Counted from the first letter of the stretch, positions 18,884 through 61,947 are shown. The stretch is 64,000 nt of DNA from Octopus sinensis (GCF_006345805.1 NC_042997.1:38874001-38938000); one strand, 5' to 3'. Program-made: numbers and translations. The notes: a model not told the origin generated them from the letters alone.

Positions 18884-19668
18884 TATATATGTATATATAT
18901 ATGTGTGTGTGTATGTGTGTGTGTGGATATATATTTGCATGTATATGTGTGTATAAACATGTGCATTATTTGCATGCGCATTGTGTATATGTATATTGTA
19001 TGTATGTGTACAATTAAGTGTATATATGTGTGTGTATGTGTGCATTGTATATATGTATATTGTAGGTGTGCTATATATACTGAATACATGTATACGTTGC
19101 GTGTATATATATGTATGCATTGTGTATGTATGTTATGTGTGTGTGTGGTCTATATATATTATATGTATGCGTACGTGTATGTGTATGCATTGTATATGTA
19201 TATTGTGTGTATATGTGGTATATCTATGTATGTGTATGTAAACACTATTTATATGTTATATGTATATATGTATATGCATTGTCTATATATATATATTATA
19301 TGTATGTATTGCGTATGTATATTGCATGCATATATTGTGTATGTGTATTTATACATGCTGTGTATGTGTATTGTATGTGTATATATATGCTAGTGTGTTT
19401 TGTGTGATATTTATATTACGTATATATGTGTGCGTGTGTTGTGTGTGTGTGTGTGTTAGTGTTGGTGTGTTGTTGTGTATGTGTTATATATGTGTGTATA
19501 TTATATATAATATACATGTTATATTTGTGTGCTGTGTGTATATATTATATATGTGGGTGCGTTGTGTGTGTGTGTGTGTTCTGTGTGTGTATGTGTGTTG
19601 TGTGTATGTTGGTGTTTGTTATACTATGTGTGTGTGTGTTGTTGTTGTGTGTGTGTATATATGTGTGT
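18530..19668. repeat. Compound (TG)/(TA)/(TATG) microsatellite tract
   Basis: Simple-repeat sequence; the source of many spurious ORFs. Confidence 0.95.
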
Positions 19669-23676: not shown

Positions 23677-23777
23677 ACTTTTTCTATTCCTGAGCGTTTT
23701 ATACTAATACATCTGTTTGTTCTGTACACCACCTGTCTTCGTCTTTTGTTTTTTTCGTAAACTCTCCCTTTATATAA

Positions 23778-23808
<31 letters not shown>

Positions 23809-23960
23809 ATATAGATATATATATGTATATATTATATATATATATATATGTATATATGTATATAGATATATATGTATATATTATATATATATATGTATAT
23901 ACTAGATATATATATATATATATAATATATATATAATATATATATATATATATGTAATAT

Positions 23961-23993
<33 letters not shown>

Positions 23994-24068
23994 TATATAT
24001 ATATATATATATATGTAGATTGATATAATTATATATATATATAATTATATATATATATGTATATCTTT

Positions 24069-24105
<37 letters not shown>

Positions 24106-24120
24106 TATATATGTATATAT

Positions 24121-24171
<51 letters not shown>

Positions 24172-24178
24172 TATATGC

Positions 24179-24209
<31 letters not shown>

Positions 24210-25176
24210 ATATGGTACAAATATATAAGACATGCTTTCTTCAGTTTCCGCCTACGAAATCCACTCACAAGGCTTTGAGTGTGTGTGTGGTGTGTGTGGT
24301 GTGTGTGTGTGTGTGTGACTTTCCTAAATCCATTAGTCTGACGTTTTCGGCACTTCCTCAATTTTGTTTTCTAATTAAACTTTGTAGTAGTACTTAACCC
24401 ACGCGTTCTGAAGCAAATTGCTAATGGTCTTGGTAATAAATTTTTTTTAATCCTCAACGACAAACTAAATCAGATTTCTGATGCCATGATATATTTTGGA
24501 ACATGACATATATCTGTGTGTTTGATTTCGGCTTGTATTATGCTATTATTTCAATACTTATTAATCCGTTTTTCTGTCTTCTTTTACGCTGTATATTGCT
24601 TTATAAACATAACTGTTTATAAGAAAAATCTTTCACAATAAAAATCTTATTTTCCACAATAAGAAAAGATTTTTCTTATCACAATAAGAAAAATCTTATT
24701 TTCTTCGCAATAAGAAAAATCCTTCACAAAGACAATCAAACTTAAATATAAGCGTTTACACGCACACACACATATATATACATATATGTCATCTTGTATT
24801 TCAAAATATATTCTTCCAAAAGGAACTGTTCGAATCGATTAAGAATTTGATGTTTATACGAAATGTCGGATGAGAGTTCAATATTTTAAAATTCAGGGGT
24901 AAATAGGGAGATAAATAAATTGATAAAATAAACATATATAGATTCGGGTTGAATTCGTGTAAAGGAATTTTCTACAGCCGTTTCAGGGGTGCAATAAATA
25001 CATAAATAGCGTTTTAAGTATTCCAAATACAGAAACATGATGCCCCCCACCCTCATCAAGATTGTGTCATTCGTGATTAAAATATCAGTCGCCATGATAG
25101 ATCGTTAGCCACTACACACATTTTTTCTCTCCTTTTTTTTCTCTCCTTCTTTTCTCTCCTTGTTCTTTCCGTGTCC

Positions 25177-26798: not shown

Positions 26799-28059
26799 AT
26801 TTTTTCTATTCCTGAGCGTTATACTAATACCTGTTGTTTTGTACACCACCTGTCTTCGTCTTTTGTTTTTTCCTCAACTCTCCCTTATATATATGTATAG
26901 TATATTATATATACAATATAATGTATATTTATATATAATATATATATATATATATATAGATATGTATTGTTATATATAGATGTATATGTATATGTATATA
27001 TATATATGTGTGTGGTGTGGTGTGTGTATATATAATATTATATACGTATATATATATATATTACGTATATAAAATATATATACACACACCCACACACACA
27101 CATTATTATATATATACATATACATATACATATATATATATACATATACATATATATATATATATAGTTATATATATATATATATATATATAAATATACA
27201 TATATATATGTATATATATATATACGTGGTTACATATATATAGGGAGAGTTGAGGAAAAAAAACAAAAGACGAAGACAGGTGGTGTACAAAACAAACAGG
27301 TATTAGTATAACGCTCAGGAATAGAAAAAATCTTTTACGTTTTTTTTATATAATATATATATATATATATAATATATCTATATATATATATATATATATA
27401 TATGCGTACAAATATATAAGACATGCTTCCTTCATTTTCCGCCTACGAAATCCACTCACAAGGCCTTGTGTTGTGTGTGTGACTTTCCTAAATCCATTAG
27501 TCTGACGTTTTCGGCACTTCCTCAATTTTGTTTTCTAATTAAACTTTGTAGTAGTACTTAACCCACGCGTTCTGAAGCAAATTGCTAATGGTCTTGGTAA
27601 TAATTTTCTAAAATCCTCAACGACAAACTAAATCAGATTTCTGATGCCATGATATATTTTGGAACATGACATATATCTGTGTGTTTGATTTCGGCTTGTA
27701 TTATGCTATTATTTCAATACTTATTAATCCGTTTTTCTGTCTTCTTTTACGCTGTATATTGCTTTATAAACATAACTGTTTATAAGAAAAATCTTTCACA
27801 ATAAAAATCTTATTTTCCACAATAAGAATAGATTTTTCACAATAAGAAAAATCTTATTTTCTTCGCAATAAGAAAAATCCTTCACAAATCAATCAAACTT
27901 AAATATAAGCGTTTACACGCACACACACATATATATACATATATGTCATCTTGTATTTCAAAATATATTCTTAGTATATTGGATTATTCCAACAGATCAT
28001 AATGTAATGCTTGTATTGCCTTTTTGCATGCCCAGATGATTTTCCACCTAAGGTATTTT

Positions 28060-28152: not shown

Positions 28153-29917
28153 GTTTCTTTATTGGCCACACAGGGCTGCACACAGATGGGACAAATTACA
28201 AGGTAGAGCTTTTCTTTTGGGGGATGAAAAAAAAGTGGCATAGGTTTTCGATCAAAAGGGATCGTAAAAGGGAAAAAAGAGAAAAAAGGAAAAAAGGAAA
28301 AGAAGCAAAAGAAAAGAAAAAAGAGGAAAAAATGGGAAGAGGAAAAAAAACGATCAATAGGGATCGTGTATCACAGTGTCATGATGTACGGTGTAAAGGG
28401 GGAAGTAGATAAGGTTTATCCGTGGGAAGAAAAGCCTACGAAAAAGACCACGGTAACCTCGATCAATATTGTTATATGTTACCACCACATTTTGTTTGCA
28501 AGTGGGTAACCCTCTGTTTTCAATTTCTGGTTCAAGGATTATGCTCAAGGTGGCTTCGTCATTCATACGTGCCATCCTTGCTACATTCACCCATCTTTTT
28601 TTAAAACATTCGCTAGACAAAACTTGAAGAAGTTGATGAGAGATTGACCAGAGAGGAAAGTGTTTGTCTCCAATCCTTTCAGACGCGTCCACCAGATACA
28701 TTCTTTCGCCATAGCCACAAGGATGATGAAAATAGCTCTTCCTTCCCGTTTGAAGGAAGGAAGCGTGACAATATTGACGATAGACTCGGCTGATAAACCG
28801 ACTCGTCCAACACGTGACAGCAGTTGTTCGACATAATCCCACATTTCGGAAATTGTTGGACACTGCACGAGCGCGTACAGAACGGTTTCGTCGCTCTGAC
28901 TGCATCTCGGGCAGGTCGGCACTGTGTTTCTCGAGCCGTGTCTGTAGAGCTTATCCCGAACGGGTAGCACTGCCAGGCCAGGGATCTCTGGAAGTTGTCC
29001 ATGAGCCCTGGCCCGAAAGTCGTCCCGAACAGGCGGGTCAGGTATTCCTCGTCGACGTCCAGGTTCGCCCCGAGCTCGTCGTCGTACCTCCCCTCCACTA
29101 ATCCCCTATAGAATGCTTGGGTTGTGATGGAGTCACTCAAGGTCGACCCGGGACGGCAGAGTTGCTTGAGAGCAACGCGACACACGCGGTGCCTTTCGCC
29201 CTTCCTCGGCCTCTTTTTGATCCACAACTGCAGTTCGGTCATGGAGACGAGCTGCGGGAAAGCATGCCTCACAAACGGCGACCACACCTGTTCACCGTCG
29301 TCTACGAAGAGCCTGAGATGTCGCAGTCTCAGCGCGTGTCTGCGCATCATCAACCACGGCATGCCCAGTCCTCCTTTTTAACGGGTGTTGACAGAAAATG
29401 GATCGCCTGACCATCGGGACGCATTCTTTCCACAAGAAGCGAAAGAGAATGCGTTCTAGTTTGGTGATGGTAGGGTCGGGACAAGGCACGACGGTCAGGC
29501 GGTAGTAGATGACGGACGCGATGTATGTGTTCGCCACCTTCGCCCGACCTTTTAGGGACAGTTTCCTCTCGGCCCATTGCCAGGCGAGAGTGACGAGTAG
29601 GGTCTAGACACTTCCGAAAAAGTACCACGGTACCACCTCCGCGCATTCGCCACAGACACGGAGGAAGATAAATGTTGAATTGTCCGCCGAAAATGTGCTG
29701 GAGTATCCGCAGGTTATGGAGTCTGGTCTCACTGATGGCTATGATATGCACATTCTGTGACTTGATGTCATTTAACAAGTAGCCTTGTTTCCAAGGTGAC
29801 CCTAAGTCACGGACATTTATACAACCTATTCTAGGCATGTTCCTATTGAAAGTTGTGCTTTACACACGAAAGAGAAAGAATGAAAGAGAGTCGCTTACTG
29901 TTCGAAAGCTGGTTGTT
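28151..29917 (-). mobile_element. L1/Tx1-clade LINE derivative lacking most of the endonuclease and all of the RT, inserted in (GATA)n
   Basis: The ORF starts at 29838 with MPRIGCINVR.LG...IIAISETRL (APE N-terminus) and jumps at ~29598 to WQWAERKLSLKGRAKVAN...FLWK...GGLGMP...CPRCSQSDETV (post-RT and zinc finger). The 3' UTR carries AATAAA just before (ATCT)n, and (GATA)n lies on both flanks. Confidence 0.88.
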
Positions 29918-30212: not shown

Positions 30213-30465
30213 GCAGAGAAAGTGAAGCGTATGTTTATGAAAAAACTATGTATGTGAAAATGTATCTCAACCAGTGCGTCGAGTAGTGAAGTGTGAAAAA
30301 AGTGTTTTCATGTATATATTTAAAAGTAAACGAGTTCATGACGGTACGGCACTAAAGTACACATATGTGTTTAATGGAAGAATGTGTTTATGCATGTGTG
30401 CTTTGTGCGCTATCTGCATATATGAAAGTATGTGTGTGTGTGCTTGTTCCTGTGCGTGTGTTGCA

Positions 30466-30503
<38 letters not shown>

Positions 30504-30836
30504 TATATAACATATATATATATAATAGATTATTAGATATATATATAATATATTAAAATATATATATATAAAATATATATATAGATATAGATATATATAT
30601 ATATATCTAGATATTAGATATAGATATAAATATAGATATATATATATATATTATATAGATATAGATATATATATATATATATATAGATATATATAATATA
30701 TAGATATAGATATAGATATAGATATATATATTATATCTTATATATAGTAGATATATATATAGATATATAATATATAATAGATTATAATATATATAGTTAT
30801 TATATATATATATATATATCTATATATATATTATAT

Positions 30837-30869
<33 letters not shown>

Positions 30870-31322
30870 TATATGGGATATATATATAATATATATATAT
30901 TATAATATATGTATATGTATATGTATATGATGGAAACAGCTGTTGCTTCATGTACTGCAAAAATATAGAACTTTATAATGGTTTGAGTTGTTCAAGCGTC
31001 CTTAATAATTCCTAAGATTATCACGCTTTTCCTTAGATTATTACTATTCAACAGCTGGCCTTGTACTCACACATAAGCATACATTCATACATACGCATAT
31101 GTGTGTGTGTGTATGCGTGTATATAATATAATATATACATAATTACATTCATAAACAAATATACACACATACTTCATTCATTTTTATATACTTCATATCT
31201 ATTTAATTAACTCATATATCTACACAAGCGGGACCCGTGAGAGAATTTTACGTTTTATAATTTTTTTTTTCTATCCTGATGCATAGACTTCTAAGTCTTC
31301 ATAACCATACTACATTATAATA

Positions 31323-32370: not shown

Positions 32371-33000
32371 CTTTAGTCAATATGTCGTCCCAGAGTGAGG
32401 GCGCGTGGCTTAGTGGTTAGGGCATTTGGCTCATGATCGTAAGGTTGTGAGTTCGATTCCCGGCGACGCGTTGTGTCCTGAGCAAAACACTTTATCACTT
32501 GCTCCAGTCCACTCAGCTGGCAAAAATGAGTTTTACTTGTATTTCAAAGGGTTCAGCCTGTCACTCTCTGTGTCACGCTGATTATCCCCGAGAACTACGT
32601 TAAGGGTACACGTGTCTGTGGAATGCTCAGCCATTTGCACGTTAAGTTCACGAGCAAGCTTTCTGTTGATCGTATCAGCTGGGACCCTCGTCGTCGTAAC
32701 CGGCGGAGTCTTTTATGTCGTCCCAGTGTTGTCTAATGGTTGCACCCATATTCAGAGTGATTGATATAATTTTGAACTAGATATGCAGCTATTTACATTC
32801 TGAGATGGGTTGTAATGTCCATTGTAATTATGTTTATCAGCGATGTGTACGACACATACGCTGATAAACATAATTACAAATGACATTACAACCCATACTC
32901 AGAATGTGAATAGCTGCATATCTAGTTCAAACTTATATAAATCACTCTGAAATATGGGTGCAACCATTAGACAACACTGGGACGACATATTGACTAAAGC
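32370..33000. repeat. Fold-back palindrome (arms ~150 bp, 3-nt loop at 32849-32851) with a SINE inserted in its left arm
   Basis: 32852-33000 is the near-perfect reverse complement of 32370-32393 joined to 32727-32848. Confidence 0.9.
32394..32713 (+). mobile_element. SINE family D (own head plus family-C tail)
   Basis: Matches 46654; 13-bp TSD TATGTCGTCCCAG at 32381 and 32714. Confidence 0.92.
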
Positions 33001-34639: not shown

Positions 34640-34681
34640 TGCGTATATTTTACTATATATATATATATATATAATAATATA

Positions 34682-34722
<41 letters not shown>

Positions 34723-35101
34723 GATATATATATATATAATATATAATATATATATATGTGTGTATATATATATGTATATATTATATATATATATATATAT
34801 AGATATATATATACATATATATATACACATATATAGATATTATATACTATATATATATATAACTATATAGTATATATATATATATATATTTATATTATAT
34901 TATATATATATTAATATATATATATATATATACATATTATATACACATATATATATATATATATTATATATATTGATATATATATATATATATTGATATA
35001 TATATTTATATATATATATATATTATATATATTGATATATATATATATATATATATTCTATATATATATATATATATGTCATATATATATATATATATAT
35101 C

Positions 35102-35153
<52 letters not shown>

Positions 35154-35326
35154 TCAATATATATATTAAATATATATATATTTATATATATATATATTTA
35201 CGTTTAATATTTTTGTTGTGCAAGATTTTTTATTGGCTAAACCTGGCAATATGACCATTCCGAAATATAACAATATATATATTTATATATACATATATAT
35301 ATATACGTATATATATATATATATAC

Positions 35327-35391: not shown

Positions 35392-35540
35392 GGTAAAATT
35401 GACTAATTAATTAATTAATAATTAATAATTTTACCAAGTAGTTCGGTATGTTAAAATAACCTTTATCGGTAACCTTATGCAAAAATTCTAAAATTATGTT
35501 ATAGAATTTTTCTATGTATATATATATGTATGTATGCATG

Positions 35541-35574
<34 letters not shown>

Positions 35575-35611
35575 TTTATGCATGTATGTATGTATGTATA
35601 TTTGTATGTAT

Positions 35612-36634
35612 GCCTTCAGTTGCTACGATGACCACCCTTGCTAGCTATGCAGATGACACAAAAGTTCCCACGCAATACAAAACCCTGAAAATATTGCGCA
35701 TCTGCAAACATGAGTGGACACAATATACAGGTGGGTGAGGACAACAACATGCAGTTTAATGCAGGTAAGTTCCAGGCCCTGCGCTACTGGCACACAAAGG
35801 TAAATGACGTGAAGACTGGATACACTGGCCCAGGAAGAATTGCAATCCCTGAGTCAAAATCAGTGCGTGACCTGGGCTTGACATGAGCAATGATGCATCT
35901 TTCCAAATGCATATTGCTAATCTGGTGATAAAATGCAGACGGCTAGCTGGATGGATTCTCCGAACTTTCAGAACAAGAGAGAAGGAGACACTGATGGTCC
36001 TATGGAAAACATTCGTCCTCAGCCGCTTGGACTACTGCTCCCAACTTTGGTCACCACACAATATAAAACAAACAGCAGAAACTCGAAGCAATTCAGAGAA
36101 GCTACACAAGAAAAATCGTCTCAATGCAAAATATCAGCTACTGGGAAAGACTGAAGGTATTAAACCTCTTCTCCCTAGAGCGGAGGCGGGAGAGATATGC
36201 AGTGATATACATCTGGAAAATCCTAGAGGTATTGTCCCAAACCTTGGCATTCAAAGTTACTCCAACCGCAGAACGGGGCGCCGCTGCGTGGTGCCAAGGA
36301 TTCCAACATCACCATCAAAATACAGGTCCAGATACTGCAACAGCTTGGGTTTCAGAGGACCACAGCTCTTTAACATCCTCCCTAAATGCCTGAGAGACTT
36401 ACATGGTGTGGATGTGGGTTTCTTTAAAACTAAACTGGATCTCTTCTTGTTGGGAATCCCAGATGAACCTACCTCACGACAGGAGACGCGGATGCGGGCA
36501 GCAGCATCGAACTCCCTTGTTGATCAAGTGCCACGTATCAGAGGTGGATTCACAAACTAGTGTAGCTCATTCAGCGGTGGCGCCCCAGCATGGCCGCGGC
36601 CTTCGGGCTAAAACATTTTTAAGGTTTAAGGATT
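35612..36634 (+). mobile_element. CR1-group LINE, 5'-truncated at the RT YADD motif
   Basis: ASYADDTKV...NMQFNAGKFQ...VRDLG...LDYCSQLWSPH...LERRRERY...GPQLFNILP...LDLFLLGIPDEP...NSLVDQ. The 3' UTR reads CCAGCATGGCC, hairpin, AAAACA. A few frameshifts. Confidence 0.92.
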
Positions 36635-38310: not shown

Positions 38311-39754
38311 CAGTTGCGGCCAAAATGCTCAGAAAGGCATTGTTTTCGTCAGAAATGTAAGTATAAGTTTTTATCAAAGTAGTTTTATATTCCATAATTT
38401 TCACAAACAATAAATACAATATTAATTGTTATTGTCTGAGATTTTGGTGTAATTTCAGCGGATAACACAAAAGTTATGGATGATTTAGTGATTTACTGCA
38501 AAACCCATGGCGGTCAAAATGATCAGAACGGTTGAAAAAATAACAAAATAATCAAAAATAACAGAGAATACTGGAATTATTTCAGATTTAGTGTGAAGGC
38601 CTTTAGCTTCAATCACACTCTGACATCTTCGACTGCATAAGGAAATTAAATTTTCAATTTCTTGCTGGGTGATCTTATTCCATTCTTCCTGAAGGGCATT
38701 CCATAATTGCTCAGTTGTTTAGATTTCTGACTTTCGAACGTTCTCCTAGAATATTCCACACAACATTTTCAATAGATTGAGATCTGGGCTTTGAGCTGGC
38801 CAACCATAACAATAACCTTTTCAGCCTTGAGGAAGTTCATGACCACCTTAGCCTTGTGACATGGGGCATTCATTGTCCTGCATGAATATGGGTGGTCGCT
38901 TAGTTGAATTTCTCAGCACAGGCAAGACATGATCTTTTACAAGTTGTTTATAAACTCCTGCATTTAACTTTCCATGTAATCGCACCAAAGGGCCCACACC
39001 ATCTCCAGATATCATTCCCCAAACCATGACACTTCCTCCACCGAATTTAACACTAGTCTTAAGGCATTTAGGCAACAATTTTTCACCTACTTTTCTACGA
39101 ACGTACCTTTTCCCATCTGAGCCAAATAGCATAAACTTAGATTCATCACTGAAATGCACTGTTTTCCATTTTTCTTGAGACCACAACACATATTCGGTTG
39201 CAAAGGTAAGACGACACTTTTTATTCTTGGATCTGATCAGTGGCTTCACTGCAGGTGCTCTTGCTTGTAGGTCATATTTAACTAAACGACGAGACACAGT
39301 TTTTTGAGATAAAGTTTTCTTCAATACAATGCTCATTTTCCGAGAAACAGCAGCAGCAGTTTTAAATCTGTCCTTCTTAACCAACTTTACCATAGCACGA
39401 TCTTCTCTCTTGGTCGTTTTTCTTGGCCTACCTGTAAACTTCTTGCTTCACACGAACCACATCATCGTAGACCTTACGAATACCGTGTACAACACTTTTT
39501 GACTTGTTAACAATCTTTGCAATAGATCCAATACTTAAATTATCCTTCCTTCGAACTTAATAATCTGCTGACTAATTGGTAACGGAGTAAGTGGCATTAT
39601 ATTAACAAAAGTACACTGCAAATATTCTTACTATGTTTAGTAACGAACCATCACGTAAACAATTCAAAAACATTAGAGTTCGCCAGTTAAATATACTAAA
39701 ACACGGAGTAAAAGCAACCGTTCTGATCATTTTTGCCGCCATGGGTTTTGACTG
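38311..39754 (-). mobile_element. Tc1-family DNA transposon with decayed transposase (~38585-39597)
   Basis: GRPRKTTKREDR, WKTVHFSDESKF, VMVWGMISGDGVGPL, FMQDN, WPAQSPDLN.IEN. TA then CAGTTGCGGCCAAAATG at the left end; inner inverted repeats at 38500-38534 and 39715-39750. The right outer end is missing. Confidence 0.92.
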
Positions 39755-41430: not shown

Positions 41431-41969
41431 CTAGAGTGGCTCGCGCGGCAAGTATAATATCTATTTCACGTCGGGACAAAACCGCGTACCATAGCCGTGC
41501 CCTTTGTCTGTCGATATGTTTTATTGTTGAATATAAAGATATTCTGCAAAGGAATTTTATTTAATTCTTTCGCAGGAAGGACTAGTTCGACGAGATGTGT
41601 TCTGTCCTCACCTTCGAAACACGCTGGAGTTGAACTAGAGACAGCTGATGAAGGGGATTTTTCCTTGTGTAGTTGTCTTGTACTCTGTTTTTTCGTTGTT
41701 TAAAAAAATGGTCCGTTCCATGCTGTTTCCATGTTCGTTTCTCGTTGAGTCTACGTCTATTTGTGGTGTCCTGTACACACGTATATATATTTATATATGC
41801 ATGTATATATATATGTAGATGTAGGTACGTACATATATGTTTGTATGCATGCATATATTTTATTTATTACACTATTGTATGACTGAGCGCCTTCGCGTCG
41901 ATTCGATTCGATTCGTTTGGTTTCGTTTCGTTTCTTCTTCTCTAAGCTGGTTTATATATATATATATAT

Positions 41970-42006
<37 letters not shown>

Positions 42007-42054
42007 GTATATATAATATATATATATATATATATTATAATATGTATATATATA

Positions 42055-42087
<33 letters not shown>

Positions 42088-42276
42088 GTATATAATATAT
42101 ATATATATATATAATATGTATATAATATATATATATATATAATATGTATATAATATATAATATGTATATAATATATATATATATATGTATATAATATTAT
42201 ATATATATGTATATAATATAATAATATATATATATATTATATAATATATAATATATAATATTATATATATATTATA

Positions 42277-42317
<41 letters not shown>

Positions 42318-42318
42318 G

Positions 42319-42351
<33 letters not shown>

Positions 42352-42619
42352 ATATGTATATAATATATATATATATAATATGTATATAATATATATATAT
42401 ATATATAATATGTATATAATATATATATATATATAGTATATATATATATATGTATATAATAATATATATATATATATATATATAATATATATAATATATA
42501 TATGTATATAATATATATATATTATATATATATATATATAATATATATATACGCATATATGTGCATATATATATATATACACATGTGTATGTTTGTAATG
42601 TATGTATATGTGTATAAAT

Positions 42620-42690
<71 letters not shown>

Positions 42691-43521: not shown

Positions 43522-43912
43522 GGAGGCGCAATGGCCCAGTGGTTAGGGCAGCGGACTCGCGGTCGTAGGATCGCGGTTTCGATTCCCAGACCGGGCGTTG
43601 TGAGTGTTTATTGAGCGAAAACACCTAAGAGCTCCACGAGGCTCCCGCAGGGGATGGTGGTGATCCCTGCTGTACTCTTTCGCCACAACTTTCTCTCACT
43701 CTTACTTCCTGTTTCTGTTGTACCTGTATTTCAAAGGGCCGGCCTTGTCACTCTCTGTGTCACGCTGAACATCCCCGAGAACTACGTTAAGGGTACACGT
43801 GTCTGTGGAGTGCTCAGCCACTTACACGTTAATTTCACGAGCAGGCTGTTCCGTTGATTCGGATCAACCGGAACCCTCGTCGTCGTAACCGACGGAGTGC
43901 TTCCATCCATCC
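43522..43912 (+). mobile_element. SINE family C
   Basis: Full copy. Confidence 0.92.
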
Positions 43913-46108: not shown

Positions 46109-46427
46109 TTTTTTGAGACTTCCTTCGTCATGACTGACCGTGGGATTGCACCTAGATAGTTACCCTCCCAGGCAAGGTTGTTTATGGAAGACCAGCAGTG
46201 GCTCATGCATAACGGCCTCCCCTATCCACGCCACCAGTGTTATCCAAGGGCCGATACAGCTTGGTACCTGTGACGTTGCAACTCATTTCTACAGATGAGT
46301 GAACTGGAGCAACGTGAAATATAGTGTTTTGCTCAAGAACACAACACGCAGCCCGGTCCGGGATTCGAACTCACAACCTCACGACCGTAAGCTCGACGTT
46401 CTAACCACTGAGCCATACGCCTTCACT
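46109..46427 (-). mobile_element. SINE family E (D-like head and core, different tail)
   Basis: Matches 58270; 11-bp TSD AGAACGTAGAT. Confidence 0.9.
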
Positions 46428-46653
46428 AGAACGTAGATATACAGAACTAATTAGTAAAACTCATTCAGTTCGACATAATAGTTTTCCGGTTTTCGTTCCA
46501 CTGCTTTCTTAATAAGTGATTTCTAATACAAACATAAGATGCGTTCAGTAGGATATGTTTTCATTGTTCATTTGATGATTTCAATTTATTACGTACTATT
46601 GTTGTAGTAGAAACGGATCGTGTCATTGAAGCCTACGTAACTAAAACATGTGT

Positions 46654-46974
46654 GAGGGCGCGTGGCTTAGTGGTTAGGGCATTCGGCTCATGATCGTAAG
46701 GTTGTGAGTTCGATTCCCGGCGACGCGTTGTGTCCTTGAGCAAGACACTTTATTTCACGTTGCTCCAGTCCACTCAGCTGGCAAAAATGAGTTGTACTTG
46801 TATTTCAAAGGGTCAGCCTTGTCACTCTCTATGTCACGCTGATTATCCCCGAGAACTACGTTAAGGGTATACGTGTCTGTGGAATGCTCAGCCATTTGCA
46901 CGTTAATTTCACGAGCAGGCTGTTCCGTTGATCGTATCAGCTGGGACCCTCGTCGTCGTAACCGGTGGAGTCTT
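46654..46974 (+). mobile_element. SINE family D
   Basis: Full copy with an (AAAGA)n tail and an AACTAAAACAT duplication. Confidence 0.92.
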
Positions 46975-47667
46975 AAAGAAAAGAAAAGAACTAAAACATA
47001 TGTATGTTTGTATCGCAATTCCTGGATTTTAAATTTTGCACGAATTGACTTTGCTCGTTTGCTCCGAAGTAAATAAAACCATTATCAATACTATATTGTC
47101 TCGCTTCTAAATTGCTCTTCACTTCATCTGGTCTCTTCTGTTGCTAATAAAACGGCAACTGGTTCTATATTACTTAATTCTGTACCGGTCCACCTACGCC
47201 CAATAACGCATCCTTTTATTTTAATTTTCCGTCATTGTCACCCTGATAATTTACTTTATATATAAACTTGCTAATCCTTCTATTATTGAACTCTCCTCTC
47301 TCTTTCTCTCTCTTTCTCTCTCTTTCTCTCTCTCTCCTATATATATAATATATATTTATTTATATTTATATATATATATATATAATATTTATATATATAT
47401 ATTTATATATATATAATATATATTTATATATATATATATTATTTATATTAATCAATATAGGGTGGCAAAAAAAATTTGTAGAATTTTTTTGCCACCAGCG
47501 GCCTAGTGGGAAAAAATTAAATAGTCATATACCATTTTTAAGTTCAACATCACAATCAAGGAACGGCCTAATAGGCCATTCACCCACTAGAAATAACAGC
47601 CAAAAGCTTTAACCGCAAAATAACATCAATTCCGTAAACCAGAGAAATTTAAAAACATTTACCTGTA

Positions 47668-47771
47668 ATTTCTTATACGATGCACCGTTTCGTCTACTGT
47701 TTAATGGTAAACTAACCTGATAAATTAAATCAAGCCAATCTACCAGGCCCTTAGATTCATCAGTAAGAAAT
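47668..47771 (-). ncRNA. Type I hammerhead ribozyme, monomer 1
   Basis: Reverse complement of the 49991-50097 motif, with small indels in stem II. Confidence 0.8.
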
Positions 47772-48150
47772 AGCCAAGTTGGAACAGATATTTTTCACGA
47801 GGCATTCTCGTCCCTGCCTCGGCAATATCTGACCTAAAATTTTAAATCATCGCACTCGCGCCAAATTTATCGGCAGCAAATAAATATAAGCCGCCGATCC
47901 ATTACGGAATTAACCAGAAAATTCATAATTAATCAATATAGGGTGGCAAAAAAAATTTTGTAGAATTTTTTTGCCACCAGCGGCCTAGTGGGAAAAAATT
48001 AAATAGTCATATACTATTTTTAAGTTCAACATCACAATCAAGGAACGGCCATAATAGGCCATTCACCCACTAGAAATAACAGCCAAAAGCTTAACCGCAA
48101 AATAACATCAATTCGTAAACCAGGAGAAAATTTAAAAACATTTACCTGTA

Positions 48151-48256
48151 ATTTCTTTACGATGCACCGTTTCGTCTACTGTTTAATGGTAAACTAACCT
48201 GATTAAATTAAATCAAGCCAGTCTACCATAGGCCCTTAGATTCATCAGTAAGAAAT
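48151..48256 (-). ncRNA. Type I hammerhead ribozyme, monomer 2
   Basis: As above; a 1-nt deletion next to the cleavage triplet (mutation or read error). Confidence 0.72.
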
Positions 48257-48639
48257 AGCCAAGTTGGAACAAATATTTTTCACGAGGCATTCTCGTCCCT
48301 GCCTCGGCAATATCTGACCTAAAATTTTCAAATCATCGCACTCGCGCCAAATTTATCGGCAGCAAATAAATATAAGCCGCCGATTCCATTACGGAATTAA
48401 CCAGAAAATTCATAATTAATCAATATAGGGTGGCAAAAAAAATTTGTAGAATTTTTTTGCCACCAGCGGCCTAGTGGGAAAAAATTAAATAGTCATATAC
48501 CATTTTTAAGTTCAACATCACAATCAAGGAACGGCCATAATAGGCCATTCACCCACTAGAAATAACAGCCAAAAGCTTTAACCGCAAAATAACATCAATT
48601 CCGTAAACCAGGAGAAAATTTAAAAACATTTACCCTGTA

Positions 48640-48744
48640 ATTTCTTATACGATGCACCGTTTCGTCTACTGTTTAATGGTAAACTAACCTGATTAAATTA
48701 AATCAAGCCAGTCTACCAGGCCCTTAGATTCATCAGTAAGAAAT
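48640..48744 (-). ncRNA. Type I hammerhead ribozyme, monomer 3
   Basis: As above. Confidence 0.82.
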
Positions 48745-49128
48745 AGCCAAGTTGGAACAGATATTTTTCACGAGGCATTCTCGTCCCTGCCTCGGCAATA
48801 TCTGACCTAAAATTTTCAAATCATCGCACTCGCGCCAAATTTATCGGCAGCAAATAAATATAAGCCGCCGATTCCATTACGGAATTAACCAGAAAATTCA
48901 TAATTAATCAATATAGGGTGGCAAAAAAAATTTTGTAGAATTTTTTTGCCACCAGCGGCCTAGTGGGAAAAAATTAAATAGTCATATACCATTTTTAAGT
49001 TCAACATCACAATCAAGGAACGGCCATAATAGGCCATTCACCCACTAGAAATAACAGCCAAAAGCTTTAACCGCAAAATAACATCAATTCCGTAAACCAG
49101 GAGAAAATTTAAAAACATTTACCCTGTA

Positions 49129-49235
49129 ATTTCTTATACGATGCACCGTTTCGTCTACTGTTTAATGGTAAACTAACCTGATTAAATTAAATCAAGCCAG
49201 TCTACCATAGGCCCTTAGATTCATCAGTAAGAAAT
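49129..49235 (-). ncRNA. Type I hammerhead ribozyme, monomer 4
   Basis: Reverse complement of 49991-50097. Confidence 0.85.
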
Positions 49236-49619
49236 AGCCAAGTTGGAACAGATATTTTTCACGAGGCATTCTCGTCCCTGCCTCGGCAATATCTGACCTA
49301 AAATGTTCAAATCATCGCACTCGCGCCAAATTTATCGGCAGCAAATAAATATAAGCCGCCGATTCCATTACGGAATTAACCAGAAAATTCATAATTAATC
49401 AATATAGGGTGGCAAAAAAAAATTTGTAGAATTTTTTTGCCACCAGCGGCCTAGTGGGAAAAAATTAAATAGTCATATACCATTTTTAAGTTCAACATCA
49501 CAATCAAGGAACGGCCATAATAGGCCATTCACCCACTAGAAATAACAGCCAAAAGCTTTAACCGCAAAATAACATCAATTCCGTAAACCAGGAGAAAATT
49601 TAAAAACATTTACCCTGTA

Positions 49620-49726
49620 ATTTCTTATACGATGCACCGTTTCGTCTACTGTTTAATGGTAAACTAACCTGATTAAATTAAATCAAGCCAGTCTACCATA
49701 GGCCCTTAGATTCATCAGTAAGAAAT
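49620..49726 (-). ncRNA. Type I hammerhead ribozyme, monomer 5
   Basis: Reverse complement of 49991-50097. Confidence 0.85.
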
Positions 49727-49990
49727 AGCCAAGTTGGAACAGATATTTTTCACGAGGCATTCTCGTCCCTGCTAGGCCGCTGGTGGCAAAAAAATTCTAC
49801 AAAATTTTTTTTGCCACCCTATATTGATTAATTATGAATTTTCTGGTTAATTCCGTAATGGAATCGGCGGCTTATATTTATTTGCTGCCGATAAATTTGG
49901 CGCGAGTGCGATGATTTGAAAATTTTAGGTCAGATATTGCCGTGGCAGGGACGAGAATGCCTCGTGAAAAATATCTGTTCCAACTTGGCT

Positions 49991-50097
49991 ATTTCTTACT
50001 GATGAATCTAAGGGCCTATGGTAGACTGGCTTGATTTAATTTAATCAGGTTAGTTTACCATTAAACAGTAGACGAAACGGTGCATCGTATAAGAAAT
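49991..50097 (+). ncRNA. Type I hammerhead ribozyme, monomer 6
   Basis: Stem I ATTTCTTA/TAAGAAAT (8 bp); CTGATGA at 49999; long stem II; GAAAC at 50074; stem III ACGG/TCGT with a TGCA loop; GTA triplet at 50087-50089. Confidence 0.88.
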
Positions 50098-50480
50098 TAC
50101 AGGGTAAATGTTTTTAAATTTCTCTGGTTTACGGAATTGATGTTATTTTGGCGGTTAAAGCTTTTGGCTGTTATTTCTAGTGGGTGAATGGCCTATTATG
50201 GCCGTTCCTTGATTGTGATGTTGAACTTAAAAATGGTATATGACTATTTAATTTTTTCCCACTAGGCCGCTGGTGGCAAAAAAATTCTACAAAATTTTTT
50301 TTGCCGCCCTATATTGATTAATTATGAATTTTCTGGTTAATTCCGTAATGGAATCGGCGGCTTATATTTATTTGCTGCCGATAAATTTGGCGCGAGTGCG
50401 ATGATTTGAAAATTTTAGGTCAGATATTGCCGAGGCAGGGACGAGAATGCCTCGTGAAAAATATCTGTTCCAACTTGGCT

Positions 50481-50587
50481 ATTTCTTACTGATGAATCTA
50501 AGGGCCTATGGTAGACTGGCTTGATTTAATTTAATCAGGTTAGTTTACCATTAAACAGTAGACGAAACGGTGCATCGTATAAGAAAT
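50481..50587 (+). ncRNA. Type I hammerhead ribozyme, monomer 7
   Basis: Identical to monomer 6, offset by 490 bp. Confidence 0.88.
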
Positions 50588-50717
50588 TACAGGGTAAATG
50601 TTTTTAAATTTTCTCCTGGTTTACGGAATTGATGTTATTTTGCGGTTAAAGCTTTTGGCTGTTATTTCTAGTGGGTGAATGGCCTATTATGGCCGTTCCT
50701 TGATTGTGATGTTGATA

Positions 50718-50750
<33 letters not shown>

Positions 50751-50771
50751 TTATTTATATTTATTTATATT

Positions 50772-50822
<51 letters not shown>

Positions 50823-51704
50823 CTCAAAATAAGCAACAAGAATGACTCCAGTAATTTGGGACGATCGTTTCGTACTATATCATTTTATTAAATGTTGTAA
50901 GTAATACAACAGTTTTAAAATGCTGAGTACTCATCAGCCAATAATAGAGGTTTTCCATTAATACAAAAATTTTCATATCAAGTGGCAACATTATAGAGAA
51001 GGTAGATACATAGACAAAGATGTGGATTTAAATTTTAAGAACATTTGGGGTAGTGGAGCTACATACATATATATGCGTATGTTATAAAATTTGTGTTGGC
51101 AGAGACATTAAGTTTCCATAACTGTTTATTTAACTAGAGTGATTGAATAAGCTGTCAGACAAAGCCTAAAGATACATTCAAGACGAATTTTATAATAAAC
51201 TTAATTCTACTTTCAGTATTATATCACTGCCAACAATAAAAGTTATCATCAAGTAATAACGTTAACGTAATGTGAGCATGTACGTATGTATGTACGATAC
51301 AAGCAAAAAAAATGTAACCAATACAATTTTAGTTTATTAACCGAAATTTTGTAGCAATGCGTACGCAAGAACTCTGCAGGTGGTTGGTTCTACGACATTA
51401 TCTGCATGTGAATTAAACAAACGCAGAGAATCGACCTTCTGTATAGTTCATGAAGAAAATACGGAACATTTACCAAAGTTGTCTCGAACTTAAAATAACA
51501 TGCATTCTCCCTAGTTTTCTGTATTTTGGTGGGGCTTCATCTGAATATTTTCAGTTTTTGGTTTCTTTATGTGTATCATGTACATATATGTATACATGTA
51601 TATGTATCACGCATATACGCACACAAATACACACACACATATACCTACAAATACATATACATATATATATATATATGTATATGTATATATTTTTTTTTCA
51701 AAAT

Positions 51705-56651: not shown

Positions 56652-57641
56652 TTTACTCAAAGTAGCAGCCCTCAGCTTCCACTACGGCCTCAAGACGGCT
56701 CCAGAACCTGGCAATGCGTTCCTCACTCTGTCTCTGGGAAGATCTTCGTACACCTCTTTGATCTTGAACACCAGCTTGGCCTTAGAGTCGTAGGCAGAGC
56801 GGTTGATGCCTTTCTTAACGCGCTCCCACAAATAGTAATCTATGGGATTACAATCGAAAGAATTAAGAGACCAGAAGTATAAGGCTGGCAAAGTTGTAGA
56901 AATTCTCCGACAACCACTTCTGACACTTTCTGGAGATATGACAAGAGACCGAGACCTGATGCCACACATATGGCCTTCCAGGAGCAGCCTTCTCCAGTCA
57001 GGGTTCTTCACTGACCCCAGCAGTTTTATGTAACCGTCTAAATTGAGTCTTAAGCCCTGTTCAGAGATGTGAAGTTGCATGATGTCATTTTCACTGGAGA
57101 TACATCCAAAGTTTGGAGAAACCTGGTTTCCATAATACGTGGGACATCACATGAATTGTAAGCCAGCCATCGGCTGTCCTGGGTGTTGCACAACTGATAC
57201 TGGGAGAAATTCTTTTCATCTGAGAAAAACCAGATCATACCCGGCTCAGCAGGATACCACAGTTTGTACAGGCGCTTCTTTGCCTTTTCGGGCCGTTCCC
57301 CTTGGCCTTGGTCGTCAGAACGTTGTCCCTTTCTTCCTGCTGGTCATGGCCTCGTAGTCTCCGTTGCAGCTGTCCATGTCACGTCTTATAAAGCCTTTGC
57401 AATGTTCACAGAGCGACAGTCATGATGTCAGCATTTTGAAACTCAGCGCTAATTATCATGAAATTGATAAATCTTTTCCATTATTCAGATAGGTCCCAAT
57501 CCTCCATGTAAGCTAACTTTAATTTAACTACAGCTTTATTTCTGATGCTCTCCAACGCCGTTCACTGTTCACCAATACATGAAGCTATTCCTGAAAAAAA
57601 AAGCAGGCATAATAAATCTCAAATTTATCCCGAACCCCCTG
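56652..57641 (-). mobile_element. mariner-like (maT-type) transposon, decayed
   Basis: IWFFSDEKNF...WSLNSFDCNPIDYYLW...[14 protein letters not shown]; the third catalytic residue is D. One terminus is TA|CAGGGGGTTCGGGATAAATTTGAG at 57641; the other TIR was not found. Confidence 0.85.
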
Positions 57642-58196: not shown

Positions 58197-58269
58197 AACA
58201 GTGAGACATATATTTATATATCTATCTATGTATATATACTTATATATGTGTTTTAATATAATATAAAGT

Positions 58270-58538
58270 GAAGGCGCATGGCTCAGTGGTTAGAGCGTCG
58301 AGCTTACGATCGTGAGGTTGTGAGCTCGAATCCCGGACCGGGCTGCGTGTTGTGTTCTTGAGCAAGGCACTTTATTTCACGTTGCTCCAGTTCACTCAGC
58401 TGTAGAAATGAGTTGCGACGTCACTGGTGCCAAGCTGTATCAACCTTTGTCTTTCCCTTGGATAACATAGGTGGCATGGAGAGGGGAGGCTGGTATGCAT
58501 GGGCGACTGCTGGTCTTCCATAAACAACCTTGCCCGGA
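58270..58538 (+). mobile_element. SINE family E, 3'-truncated
   Basis: Matches 46109-46427. Confidence 0.88.
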
Positions 58539-61565: not shown

Positions 61566-61947
61566 GGAGGCACAATGGCCCAGTGGTTAGGGCAGCGGAC
61601 TCGCGGTCGTAGGATCGCGGTTTCGATTCCCAGACCGGGCGTTGTGAGTGTTTATTGAGCAAAAACACCTAAAAGTTCCACGAGGCTCCGGCAGGAGATG
61701 GTGGTGATCCCTGCTGTACTCTTTCACCACAACTTTCTCTCACTCTTTCTTCCTGTTTCTGTTGTACCTGTATTTCAAAGGGCCGGCCTTGTCACTCTCT
61801 GTGTCACGCTGAATATCCCCGAGAACTACGTTAAGAGTACACGTGTCTGTGGAGTGCTCAGCCACTTACACGTTAATTTCACGAGCAGGCTGTTCCGTTG
61901 GTCGGATCAACCGGAACCCTCGTCGTCGTAACCGACGGAGTGCTTCC
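61566..61947 (+). mobile_element. SINE family C
   Basis: Full copy; 13-bp TSD ATACTCTGGGTCA. Confidence 0.93.

What the first reader, a model, noticed from the sequence alone, without database searches (positions are those of the whole stretch)
47447..50715. Tandem ~490-bp array with a hammerhead ribozyme in every monomer: candidate retrozyme/circRNA system
Seen: seven copies of a complete type I hammerhead (8-bp stem I, CUGAUGA, stem II, GAAAC, 4-bp stem III, GUA), spaced 483-491 bp apart, with no ORF. Known: tandem repeats with type I hammerheads (newt satellite 2, schistosome SM-alpha, cave-cricket pDo500, metazoan retrozymes) are transcribed as multimers and self-cleave to monomers, and retrozymes accumulate as circular RNAs thought to be mobilised by Penelope-like RTs. 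Inferred: this is such an element. The monomer is at the long end for animal retrozymes, and I do not recall one described from a cephalopod, though I could not search. Runs of six or more U on the ribozyme strand argue against Pol III read-through and favour Pol II.
Basis: partly seen in the sequence, partly recalled or inferred. Interest (0 to 1): 0.95.

Follow-up and report, generated by a model that had tools for sequence, protein, structure and literature searches.

The report
Hammerhead-bearing retrozyme array in a TA microsatellite
A non-coding 491-bp repeat, each unit carrying a slightly unusual hammerhead ribozyme motif, sits as two opposed arms inside a (TA)n microsatellite; it looks like a new member of the known animal "retrozyme" retroelements, interesting mainly for its insertion footprint rather than as a new kind of system.

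Summary
The repeat is real but is not a simple tandem. 47447-49772 holds 4.7 units with the hammerhead on the minus strand. 49772-50715 holds 1.9 units with it on the plus strand, joined head-to-head. The whole insert splits one (TA)n microsatellite.

Each unit (482-491 bp, 36% GC, no ORF over 35 aa) carries a type I hammerhead-like motif. The catalytic core is complete, with an 8-bp helix I and a weak 4-bp helix III capped by a palindromic loop. The base of helix II is an A•C mismatch instead of the conserved G-C. One of the seven copies has a 1-nt deletion at the cut site.

No Rfam hammerhead model detects the array motif. Rfam instead finds a separate, more canonical solo hammerhead at 50854-50942(-), abutting the same (TA)n.

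The motif is far above chance. The unit RNA is strongly structured (z about -7.5), more so in hammerhead polarity.

In hammerhead sense, both arms have their 3' ends at the (TA)n flanks and their 5' ends at the centre. This is the tandem-plus-inverted footprint described for Penelope-like elements.

Best reading: a non-LTR retrozyme array, probably dependent on hammerhead dimers. Cleavage, circular RNA, genomic copy number and source organism are all untested. I class it as a new member of a known kind, of moderate interest.

The parts
47338..47446 (.). Left half of the interrupted (TA)n/(TATTTA)n microsatellite, the target site
   Evidence: TRF. Joining the flanks restores one continuous TA-rich tract.
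47447..49772 (-). M arm: 4.7 repeat units with the hammerhead sense on the minus strand. The sense 3' end (unit position 234) is at 47447 against (TA)n. The sense 5' end (unit position 347) is at 49772.
49772..50715 (+). P arm: 1.9 repeat units with the hammerhead sense on the plus strand. The 5' end (about unit position 173) is at the centre and shares 1 nt with the M arm. The 3' end (unit position 136) is at 50715 against (TA)n.
50716..50822 (.). Right half of the (TA)n microsatellite
   Evidence: TRF
49991..50097 (+). Hammerhead-like motif with predicted cut after 50089. Helix I is ATTTCTTA/TAAGAAAT, followed by CUGAUGA. Helix II is A•C plus UCUA/UAGA plus a 58-nt hairpin extension, followed by GAAA. 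Helix III is ACGG/UCGU with a UGCA loop, then GUA.
50481..50587 (+). Hammerhead-like motif, predicted cut after 50579
49620..49726 (-). Hammerhead-like motif, predicted cut between 49628 and 49627
49129..49235 (-). Hammerhead-like motif, predicted cut between 49137 and 49136
48640..48744 (-). Hammerhead-like motif with a 2-nt deletion in the helix II extension; predicted cut between 48648 and 48647
48151..48256 (-). Defective or variant copy. The U immediately 3' of GUA is deleted, so helix I is 7 bp and out of register at its base.
   Evidence: It failed the descriptor.
47668..47771 (-). Hammerhead-like motif with three small changes in the helix II extension; predicted cut between 47676 and 47675
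49782..49818 (+). Example of the 13-15-bp A-run/U-run hairpin found once per unit (GGUGGCAAAAAAA...UUUUUUUGCCACC). It contains the U8-9 run.
   Evidence: The weak mir-5728 hits here are spurious.
50854..50942 (-). Separate solo type I hammerhead outside the array. It has a canonical G10.1-C11.1, a fully palindromic helix III (ACGAUCGU) and GUC. It lies 31 nt from the (TA)n tract.
   Evidence: Rfam RF00163: 27.6 bits (gathering score 34), E 9.3e-4 in a 4.2-kb scan. Also found by my descriptor; fold.
50823..51560 (-). Non-coding, non-repeated segment carrying the solo hammerhead at its 3' end, bounded by microsatellites. It may be the 5'-truncated terminus of a Penelope-like element. The extent is uncertain.
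   Evidence: It is not unusually structured as RNA (z -0.9 and -1.8).

Best explanation
The locus is one insertion of a non-autonomous, non-coding retroelement of the metazoan non-LTR retrozyme type.

Proposed cycle:
1. The repeat is transcribed as a multimer in hammerhead polarity.
2. The hammerheads of neighbouring units pair through their near-palindromic helix III (ACGGUGCAUCGU) to form a double hammerhead. Each cuts after GUA, releasing ~491-nt monomers.
3. A host RNA ligase circularises the monomers.
4. The circle settles into a branched, rod-like fold in which core UGAUG pairs with CAUCG. This keeps the ribozyme off.
5. A Penelope-like element's RT/GIY-YIG endonuclease, encoded elsewhere in the genome, nicks a (TA)n tract. 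It reverse-transcribes the hammerhead-sense RNA from both target 3' ends. Copying round the circle, or along a multimer, gives multi-unit cDNA.
6. The result is two opposed arms whose 3' ends touch the target and whose 5' ends meet in the middle.

Shown here: the anatomy, motif and fold statistics, lack of coding capacity, the target, and the arm geometry.
Inferred: transcription, cleavage, circularisation, the identity of the mobilising enzyme, and rolling-circle copying.
For: - Motif: complete hammerhead core in type I topology with an 8-bp helix I in 6 of 7 units. About 0.003 such motifs are expected per window, which is roughly 3e-5 per 491-bp monomer.
- Unit properties match published retrozymes (PMC7229834): 482-491 bp, 36% GC, no ORF.
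- RNA structure: the circular unit has MFE -149 kcal/mol, z = -7.55 and 62% of bases paired. It is 37 kcal/mol more stable than the antisense. The hammerhead strand is G+U-rich. The adjacent non-coding DNA folds no better than shuffles.
- Dimer mode: helix III is weak alone (pair probability under 1%). Its palindromic loop gives a 12-bp intermolecular helix of -19.5 kcal/mol. This is the dimer-dependent design described for metazoan type I, newt, axolotl and PLE hammerheads (PMC4209133, PMC7229834).
- Insertion footprint: the insert splits a (TA)n tract, and such tracts cover only about 4% of the window. (TA)n is the reported preferred PLE target. An inverted 5'-truncated copy joined to tandem copies is the reported PLE insertion structure (PMC8557442).
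- Template strand: both arms have their hammerhead-sense 3' ends at the target. That is expected only if the hammerhead-sense RNA was the reverse-transcription template.
- Neighbour: a second, canonical PLE-style hammerhead terminus abuts the same tract.
- Precedent: a mismatch at the base of helix II exists in an active natural retrozyme, axolotl HHR_Amex2 (U•U; PMC7229834).
Against: - No Rfam hammerhead model scores the array motif, even in a 138-nt scan at E<=10.
- The G10.1-C11.1 pair, described as highly conserved (PMC4209133), is A•C in all seven copies.
- Nearest-neighbour folding puts the single-motif active fold about 20 kcal/mol above the MFE.
- The units are near-identical, so there is no covariation support.
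- No other copy exists in the 64-kb window. None was found in any searchable collection, although none of these collections is known to hold animal genome assemblies.
- No PLE RT or GIY-YIG gene lies in the window.
- Variants shared by non-adjacent units do not fit simple rolling-circle copying of one circle.
- The inversion could be an assembly artefact.
Confidence: 0.6

Rival explanations
1. Fossil or attenuated element. The repeat descends from a retrozyme or PLE terminus, but the G10.1-to-A change disabled the ribozyme. The present array then grew at the DNA level, by unequal crossing-over or replication slippage, as an ordinary minisatellite with no current RNA cycle.
For: - The A•C mismatch is present in every copy.
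- Rfam is negative.
- The active fold is strongly disfavoured in silico.
- Variants are shared by non-adjacent units.
- Only a single locus was seen.
Against: - DNA-level expansion does not explain the head-to-head arms whose sense 3' ends both abut a (TA)n target.
- Very high unit identity together with a strongly strand-biased RNA structure suggests recent RNA-level selection or a recent origin.
- A natural retrozyme with a mismatch at the base of helix II is active as a dimer (PMC7229834).
Confidence: 0.22
2. The repeat is the tandemly reiterated terminal repeat (pLTR) of an autonomous Penelope-like element whose coding body lies elsewhere or has been lost, rather than an independent retrozyme family.
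For: - PLE termini carry hammerheads and form partial tandems and inverted copies at (TA)n (PMC8557442, PMC4209133).
- Vertebrate retrozymes are sister to PLE pLTRs (bioRxiv 10.64898/2026.07.22.740005).
- A PLE-like hammerhead terminus sits next door.
Against: - No RT or GIY-YIG ORF lies in or beside the array.
- Nearly seven units with no coding body is the retrozyme pattern.
- The array hammerhead has long helices I and III rather than the minimal PLE type, which has a 4-5-bp helix I and no or a 1-2-bp helix III (PMC4209133).
- The array shows no sequence similarity to the neighbouring hammerhead segment.
Confidence: 0.1
3. The hammerhead-like motif is a coincidence in an ordinary structured satellite.
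For: - Rfam is negative.
- A genome-wide scan of tens of thousands of windows would turn up some chance motifs. At 0.003 per window, that is of the order of 100 per 2-3 Gb.
Against: - The chance that any one 491-bp monomer carries such a motif is about 3e-5.
- It coincides with a tandem array, a palindromic helix III loop, a (TA)n target, PLE-type geometry and a neighbouring true hammerhead.
Confidence: 0.04
4. This rival concerns the geometry only and is independent of the others. The inversion at 49772 is an assembly artefact, such as a fold-back or chimeric long read, and the real locus is a simple tandem array.
For: - Most differences between units are 1-nt indels, which is typical of noisy long-read consensus.
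- Fold-back artefacts are known for long-read libraries (general knowledge).
Against: - The two arms end at different unit positions (234 and 136), and each abuts genuine TA-rich flank.
- The centre joins unit positions 347 and about 173 rather than forming a perfect palindrome. A simple fold-back would be symmetric.
- The structure matches a documented PLE insertion pattern (PMC8557442).
Confidence: 0.12

Closest known systems
Metazoan non-LTR retrozymes (Cervera & de la Pena 2020, PMC7229834), e.g. the Mytilus galloprovincialis 350-390-bp repeats
   Same: Non-coding tandem unit of a few hundred bp, low GC, one type I hammerhead per unit, highly self-paired unit RNA, and no LTR, PBS or PPT. 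The mussel hammerheads also lack the archetypal loop 1-loop 2 contacts.
   Different: The unit is somewhat longer (491 bp, against 170-400-nt circles, though within the 51-972 bp reported for vertebrate families). The hammerhead has A•C at 10.1/11.1, an 8-bp helix I and a 58-nt helix II extension, and is not detected by Rfam. Expression and circularity are untested. The array is split into two inverted arms.
Newt satellite 2 and axolotl retrozymes Rtz_331/Rtz_353 (HHR_Amex1/2)
   Same: A weak helix III with a palindromic loop, so the ribozyme is expected to work as a double hammerhead in multimeric transcripts. HHR_Amex2 also has a mismatch (U•U) at the base of helix II and still cleaves, at 22% per hour as a monomer and efficiently as a dimer.
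   Different: Here the helix III stem is longer (4 bp including a G•U). The mismatch is A•C. No sequence similarity. Copy number is unknown, against about 10^5 motifs in axolotl.
Penelope-like element termini (pLTRs) with hammerheads (PMC4209133, PMC8557442)
   Same: (TA)n target preference. Partial tandems plus an inverted 5'-truncated copy. A hammerhead near the 3' end with a palindromic helix III, which the solo motif at 50854-50942 fits well.
   Different: No RT/GIY-YIG ORF here. The array motif is not the minimal PLE type: it has no extra nucleotide followed by G10.1-C11.1, and its helix I is long.
Schistosoma Sm-alpha and cave-cricket pDo500 hammerhead repeats
   Same: Type I hammerheads embedded in short, non-coding, repeated, transcribed elements of invertebrates.
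   Different: Those carry canonical cores with G10.1-C11.1 and short helix II loops, and they are detected by Rfam RF00163. They have no reported inverted-arm insertion in (TA)n. This comparison rests on general knowledge and was not tested here.
Plant LTR retrozymes (PMC4918200)
   Same: Non-autonomous retroelements whose transcripts are proposed to self-cleave with hammerheads and circularise.
   Different: The plant elements use type III hammerheads inside LTRs. They have PBS/PPT, 4-bp TSDs, over 55% GC, and are mobilised by Ty3-type LTR elements. None of these features is present here.

Membership tests
Metazoan non-LTR retrozyme | One type I hammerhead per repeat unit: conserved core C3-A9, G12-A14, A15.1-U16.1 and H17, with open helix I and closed helices II and III | tested here: met
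   Core and topology are present in 7 of 7 units. All helices are intact in 6 of 7. Chance expectation is 0.003 per window.
Metazoan non-LTR retrozyme | Hammerhead recognisable as a canonical HHR: Rfam RF00163 score and a G10.1-C11.1 pair | tested here: not met
   No hit at gathering score, at E<=10 over 4.2 kb, or at E<=10 over 138 nt. Positions 10.1/11.1 are A•C. This is not strictly defining, because axolotl HHR_Amex2 has U•U there (PMC7229834).
Metazoan non-LTR retrozyme | Short tandem repeats (about 150-450 bp, up to 972 bp), from dimers to multimers | tested here: met
   491-bp period. 4.7 plus 1.9 units in two opposed arms.
Metazoan non-LTR retrozyme | Low GC (under 45-50%) and no coding capacity, LTR, PBS or PPT | tested here: met
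   36% GC. Longest ORF is 35 aa and longest open stretch is 43 codons. The repeat analysis shows no terminal repeats other than the units themselves. PBS and PPT were not searched for specifically.
Metazoan non-LTR retrozyme | Unit RNA is highly self-paired | tested here: met
   Circular MFE -149.2 kcal/mol, z -7.55, 62% of bases paired. The antisense is 37 kcal/mol weaker. The neighbouring DNA control gives z -0.9 and -1.8.
Metazoan non-LTR retrozyme | Self-cleavage of transcripts at the predicted site | not testable with these tools
   In silico only. The single-motif fold is disfavoured. The dimeric helix III is stable.
Metazoan non-LTR retrozyme | Accumulation as linear and circular unit-length RNA | not testable with these tools
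   No transcriptome data are accessible.
Metazoan non-LTR retrozyme | Many dispersed genomic copies, and co-occurrence with hammerhead-bearing PLEs in the same genome | tested here: inconclusive
   No second copy in the window. No copies in the searchable collections, which are not known to hold animal genome assemblies. No PLE ORF in the window, but a PLE-style solo hammerhead terminus lies next door.
Penelope-like element (autonomous) | ORF encoding a telomerase-like RT plus a GIY-YIG endonuclease between the terminal repeats | tested here: not met
   No such ORF in or near the array. Pfam hits in the window are LINE-type RVT_1, Exo_endo_phos and zf-RVT, plus Tc1.
Penelope-like element (insertion signature) | Insertion into (TA)n, with partial tandems and an inverted 5'-truncated copy | tested here: met
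   (junctions and joined flanks), compared with PMC8557442.
Plant-type LTR retrozyme | Type III hammerheads within LTRs, with PBS/PPT, 4-bp TSDs and high GC | tested here: not met
   Type I topology, no LTRs and 36% GC. No TSD can be discerned in the microsatellite.

The most novel reading that the evidence does not exclude
The locus may be a preserved snapshot of retrozyme integration by Penelope-type machinery. Multi-unit cDNA would have been primed from both 3' ends of a cut (TA)n tract on hammerhead-sense RNA, either a circle copied round and round or a multimer. On this reading the ribozyme is a working, lineage-specific hammerhead variant with A•C at 10.1/11.1 and a long helix II extension, which covariance-model annotation misses. 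That would imply a hidden population of such ribozymes and retrozymes in this, possibly cephalopod, genome.
Probability: 0.3. Interest if true: 0.55.

Novelty: new member of a known kind. Interest (0 to 1): 0.4.

Why it matters
If confirmed, the locus would add a retrozyme family from a lineage where none appears in the papers I could search. Those papers list hammerhead and Penelope counts for cephalopods, but no retrozyme.

It would also give structural, locus-level support for the idea that animal retrozymes are mobilised by Penelope-like elements, which so far has been argued mainly from co-occurrence and pLTR phylogeny. The support consists of the (TA)n target, the inverted 5'-truncated arm, and sense 3' ends at both target junctions.

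It also shows that Rfam-based annotation can miss plausible hammerheads that have long helix II insertions and a non-canonical 10.1/11.1 pair. Published hammerhead counts may therefore be underestimates.

It does not reveal a new kind of system.

Tried and rejected
1. Rfam at gathering score on the whole window found nothing. At E<=10 on 4.2 kb it found only a neighbouring solo hammerhead. A whole-window E<=1 scan gave only microsatellite-driven miRNA artefacts. A 138-nt scan over one array motif gave no hammerhead hit.

2. No other ribozyme family (HDV-like, twister, hairpin and so on) appears in the unit at E<=10.

3. External copies by DNA pattern:
   - A gapped core bait hit one AT-rich phage sequence, present in three viral-collection loci and one metagenome contig.
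   - That sequence has no helix I, no Rfam hit and no other similarity, so I rejected it as chance.
   - Exact baits inside and outside the ribozyme found nothing in genome contigs or viral contigs.

4. External copies through gene calls: a composite of all stop-free stretches of the unit, searched against 5.8 billion proteins, gave no hit.

5. Source organism: a LINE ORF from the window matched only anonymous ENA, Logan and JGI contigs at 54% identity or less. The record names carried no taxon. 'Cephalopod' remains unverified.

6. I looked for a PLE RT/GIY-YIG in the window and found none.

7. I tested whether the solo-hammerhead segment is a second structured retrozyme unit. It is not unusually structured and not repeated in the window.

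8. I considered reading the extra A after A9 as the PLE-type bulged nucleotide. I rejected this because the next pair would be U•C, so the A•C reading stands.
Full report
**Observation**

Tandem Repeats Finder reports a 491-bp period with 98% matches from 47447 to 49772. BLAST of one unit against the window shows that the repeat continues to 50715, but in the opposite orientation.

Reading the sequence, a motif scan and the repeat analysis give the following layout:
- 47447-49772 holds 4.7 units whose hammerhead-like motif is on the minus strand.
- 49772-50715 holds 1.9 units with the motif on the plus strand.
- The two blocks are joined head-to-head.

The units are 482-491 bp, 36% GC and 97.5-100% identical. 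Most differences are single-base indels, which may be assembly noise. Nothing else in the 64-kb window resembles the unit. It is the only long-period array in the window.

The finding's coordinates and its count of seven motifs are therefore right, and so is the spacing within each arm. The description as a single tandem array is not.

**The motif**

Each copy reads 5'-AUUUCUUA-CUGAUGA-[helix II]-GAAA-CGG-UGCA-UCG-UA-UAAGAAAU-3'. All the strictly conserved hammerhead positions are present: C3-A9, G12-A14, A15.1-U16.1 and H17 = A. The topology is type I.
- Helix I is a perfect 8-bp helix.
- Helix III is 4 bp (A-U, C-G, G-C, G•U) capped by the palindromic tetraloop UGCA.
- Helix II starts with an A•C mismatch at 10.1/11.1. 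Four pairs follow (UCUA/UAGA), then an internal loop and a 19-bp hairpin. The whole forms a 58-nt extension.

One copy, at 48256-48151(-), has lost the U just 3' of the cleavage site.

A relaxed structural descriptor was run on 300 first-order Markov randomisations of the window. It finds 0.13 motifs with helix I of at least 4 bp and 0.0033 with at least 8 bp. For a single 491-bp monomer the chance is about 3e-5, so the motif is not a coincidence of base composition. I wrote the descriptor after seeing the motif, which makes this estimate somewhat generous.

Rfam finds nothing at gathering thresholds. It finds nothing for the array motifs at E<=10 in a 4.2-kb scan. It also finds nothing at E<=10 in a 138-nt scan, where about 12 bits would have been enough.

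The likely reasons are the long helix II insertion, the A•C mismatch at a position where G-C is 'highly conserved' (PMC4209133), the longer helix III and GUA instead of GUC.

This is real evidence against a canonical hammerhead. It is not decisive, for two reasons. The axolotl retrozyme ribozyme HHR_Amex2 has a U•U mismatch at the base of helix II, yet it cleaves at 22% per hour as a monomer and efficiently as a dimer (PMC7229834). The D. virilis PLE hammerhead likewise escaped standard descriptors (PMC4209133).

**A second hammerhead**

The permissive Rfam scan found a different motif at 50942-50854 on the minus strand: RF00163, 27.6 bits against a gathering score of 34, E = 9e-4. My descriptor also picks it up.

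It has G10.1-C11.1, GUC, a fully palindromic helix III (ACGAUCGU) and, again, a long helix II insertion. It lies 31 nt from the right-hand (TA)n tract, at the 3' end of a non-coding segment of about 740 bp that is not repeated in the window. PLE hammerheads occupy this position near element 3' ends (PMC8557442).

**RNA structure**

A unit-length RNA in hammerhead polarity folds to -149.2 kcal/mol as a circle, with z = -7.55 against dinucleotide shuffles and 62% of bases paired. The antisense reaches only -111.8 kcal/mol. The hammerhead strand is G+U-rich, which is what RNA-level structure on that strand would produce. As an internal control, the adjacent 738-bp non-coding segment folds no better than shuffles (z -0.9 and -1.8).

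In the nearest-neighbour model the single-motif active fold is rare. Helix III pairs have probabilities under 1%. The MFE instead pairs core UGAUG with CAUCG, which extends helix I into a rod.

Two copies of the helix III segment form a 12-bp intermolecular helix of -19.5 kcal/mol. This is the double-hammerhead design described for metazoan type I hammerheads (PMC4209133, PMC7229834). In that design, cleavage is allowed in multimeric transcripts and suppressed in the unit-length circle.

**Insertion anatomy**

The array is flanked on both sides by (TA)n/(TATTTA)n. Joining the flanks restores one continuous microsatellite. TA tracts cover only about 4% of the window.

In hammerhead sense, the arms are arranged as follows:
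- The minus-strand arm runs from unit position 347 at the centre to position 234 at the left flank.
- The plus-strand arm runs from about position 173 at the centre to position 136 at the right flank.
- The two arms overlap by 1 nt at the centre.

Both sense 3' ends therefore touch the target, and both 5' ends meet in the middle. Priming of reverse transcription from both target 3' ends on hammerhead-sense RNA would produce exactly this. It also matches the published PLE pattern of partial tandems plus an inverted 5'-truncated copy at (TA)n targets (PMC8557442). No target-site duplication can be discerned in the low-complexity flanks.

**Coding and context**

The unit has no ORF above 35 aa and no open stretch above 43 codons. 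The window carries LINE-type endonuclease and RT fragments and Tc1/mariner fragments, but no PLE RT or GIY-YIG. Any mobilising enzyme would therefore have to act in trans.

The inference that Pol II rather than Pol III transcribes the repeat is reasonable but untested.

**Searches beyond the window**

The accessible DNA collections (viral contigs, JGI metagenomes, prokaryotic genomes) are not known to hold animal genome assemblies.
- A gapped core bait hit a single AT-rich phage sequence. It has no helix I and no Rfam support, so I judged it a chance match.
- Exact baits found nothing.
- A composite protein query built from the unit's open stretches found nothing.
- A LINE ORF from the window matched only anonymous contigs at 54% identity or less.

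The source organism therefore remains unverified. Copy number and covariation could not be assessed.

**Comparison with the known**

Non-LTR retrozymes are described as tandem repeats with type I hammerheads, of low GC and non-coding. [quoted passage not shown]

Consensus lengths of 51-972 bp are reported, with at most seven units in 75% of families, and a sister relationship to PLE terminal repeats (bioRxiv 10.64898/2026.07.22.740005). The giant squid genome paper lists 235 Rfam Hammerhead_1 loci and Penelope elements (PMC6962438). A recent Octopus vulgaris repeat annotation lists 31 PLE families but does not mention retrozymes (PMC13282606).

The locus fits the family on every feature I could test except canonical recognisability of the ribozyme. 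Its defining behaviours (cleavage, circular RNA, dispersal) are untested.

**Verdict**

The most likely explanation is a non-LTR retrozyme array with a dimer-dependent, non-canonical hammerhead, inserted into (TA)n by Penelope-type machinery (confidence about 0.6). The main rival is a fossil or attenuated derivative that is now just a minisatellite (about 0.2).

It is a new member of a known kind. The points of interest are the integration footprint, which links retrozymes to PLE-style insertion, and a plausible hammerhead variant that Rfam cannot see.

Noticed in passing
window 50854-50942 (-), within segment 50823-51560: A solo type I hammerhead (RF00163, 27.6 bits, E 9e-4) with canonical G10.1-C11.1, a fully palindromic helix III and a long helix II insert. 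It lies 31 nt from the same (TA)n tract as the array and looks like the 3' terminus of a 5'-truncated Penelope-like element.
   Followed up: partly
window 47447-50715 taken as one transcript: The two opposed arms are 98-99% complementary over up to 944 nt. The innermost pairing is 177 nt at 100% identity across a 172-nt loop. Read-through transcription would make a long hairpin dsRNA, a possible source of siRNA or piRNA against the family.
   Followed up: no
window 46652-46974; also 32395-32712, 9804-9985, 43717-43898, 61761-61941, 58268-58415, 46279-46426: A dispersed ~320-bp repeat family at 78-95% identity. Its 5' part gives a sub-threshold Rfam tRNA hit (46658-46727, 25.1 bits). It is probably a tRNA-derived SINE.
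   Followed up: partly
window 28354-29838 (-), 1496-1987 (-), 35883-36560 (+): Fragments of non-LTR (LINE) retrotransposons with weak Pfam hits to Exo_endo_phos, zf-RVT and RVT_1. The nearest database relatives of the 35883-36560 ORF are anonymous metagenome or SRA contigs at 54% identity or less.
   Followed up: partly
window 38848-39393 (-) and 56682-57080 (-): Tc1/mariner transposase remnants. The first has a Pfam HTH_Tnp_Tc3_2 hit at 3.6e-16. The second is assigned by eye from a DDE-like C-terminal motif.
   Followed up: partly
window-wide, e.g. 18889-18959, 27005-27104, 35522-35584, 42576-42649, 51561-51646: Dozens of sub-threshold Rfam 'mir-297/466/3149/5014' hits all fall on TA/TG microsatellites and are low-complexity artefacts. 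Long (TA)n tracts of 440-740 bp are frequent (23771-24213, 30465-30928, 34654-35197, 41953-42690).
   Followed up: yes
each unit, e.g. window 49782-49818 (+): A perfect 13-15-bp hairpin made of an A-run and a U-run flanked by GGUGGC/GCCACC. It holds the U8-9 run. The minus-strand arm ends 20 nt downstream of it. It gives spurious weak mir-5728 hits, and its role is unknown.
   Followed up: no
L001 5718-5808 (-) (same as L003), L002 1443-1533 (-), L004 1603-1693 (-): Related AT-rich phage or metagenome contigs contain CUGAUGA-A-UCUA...UAGA-C-GAAAC followed by a 7-bp hairpin ending in GUA. They have no complementary flanks for helix I and no Rfam hit. I judged this a chance match to the search pattern.
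   Followed up: partly
units M_2/M_4 and P_1/M_3frag (alignment): Some variants are shared by non-adjacent units, even across the two arms: a TA deletion in the helix II extension, and TTT--CTCTGG against TTTTCTCCTGG. This does not fit copying of a single circular template. It suggests a heterogeneous multimeric template, gene conversion or recurrent consensus errors.
   Followed up: no
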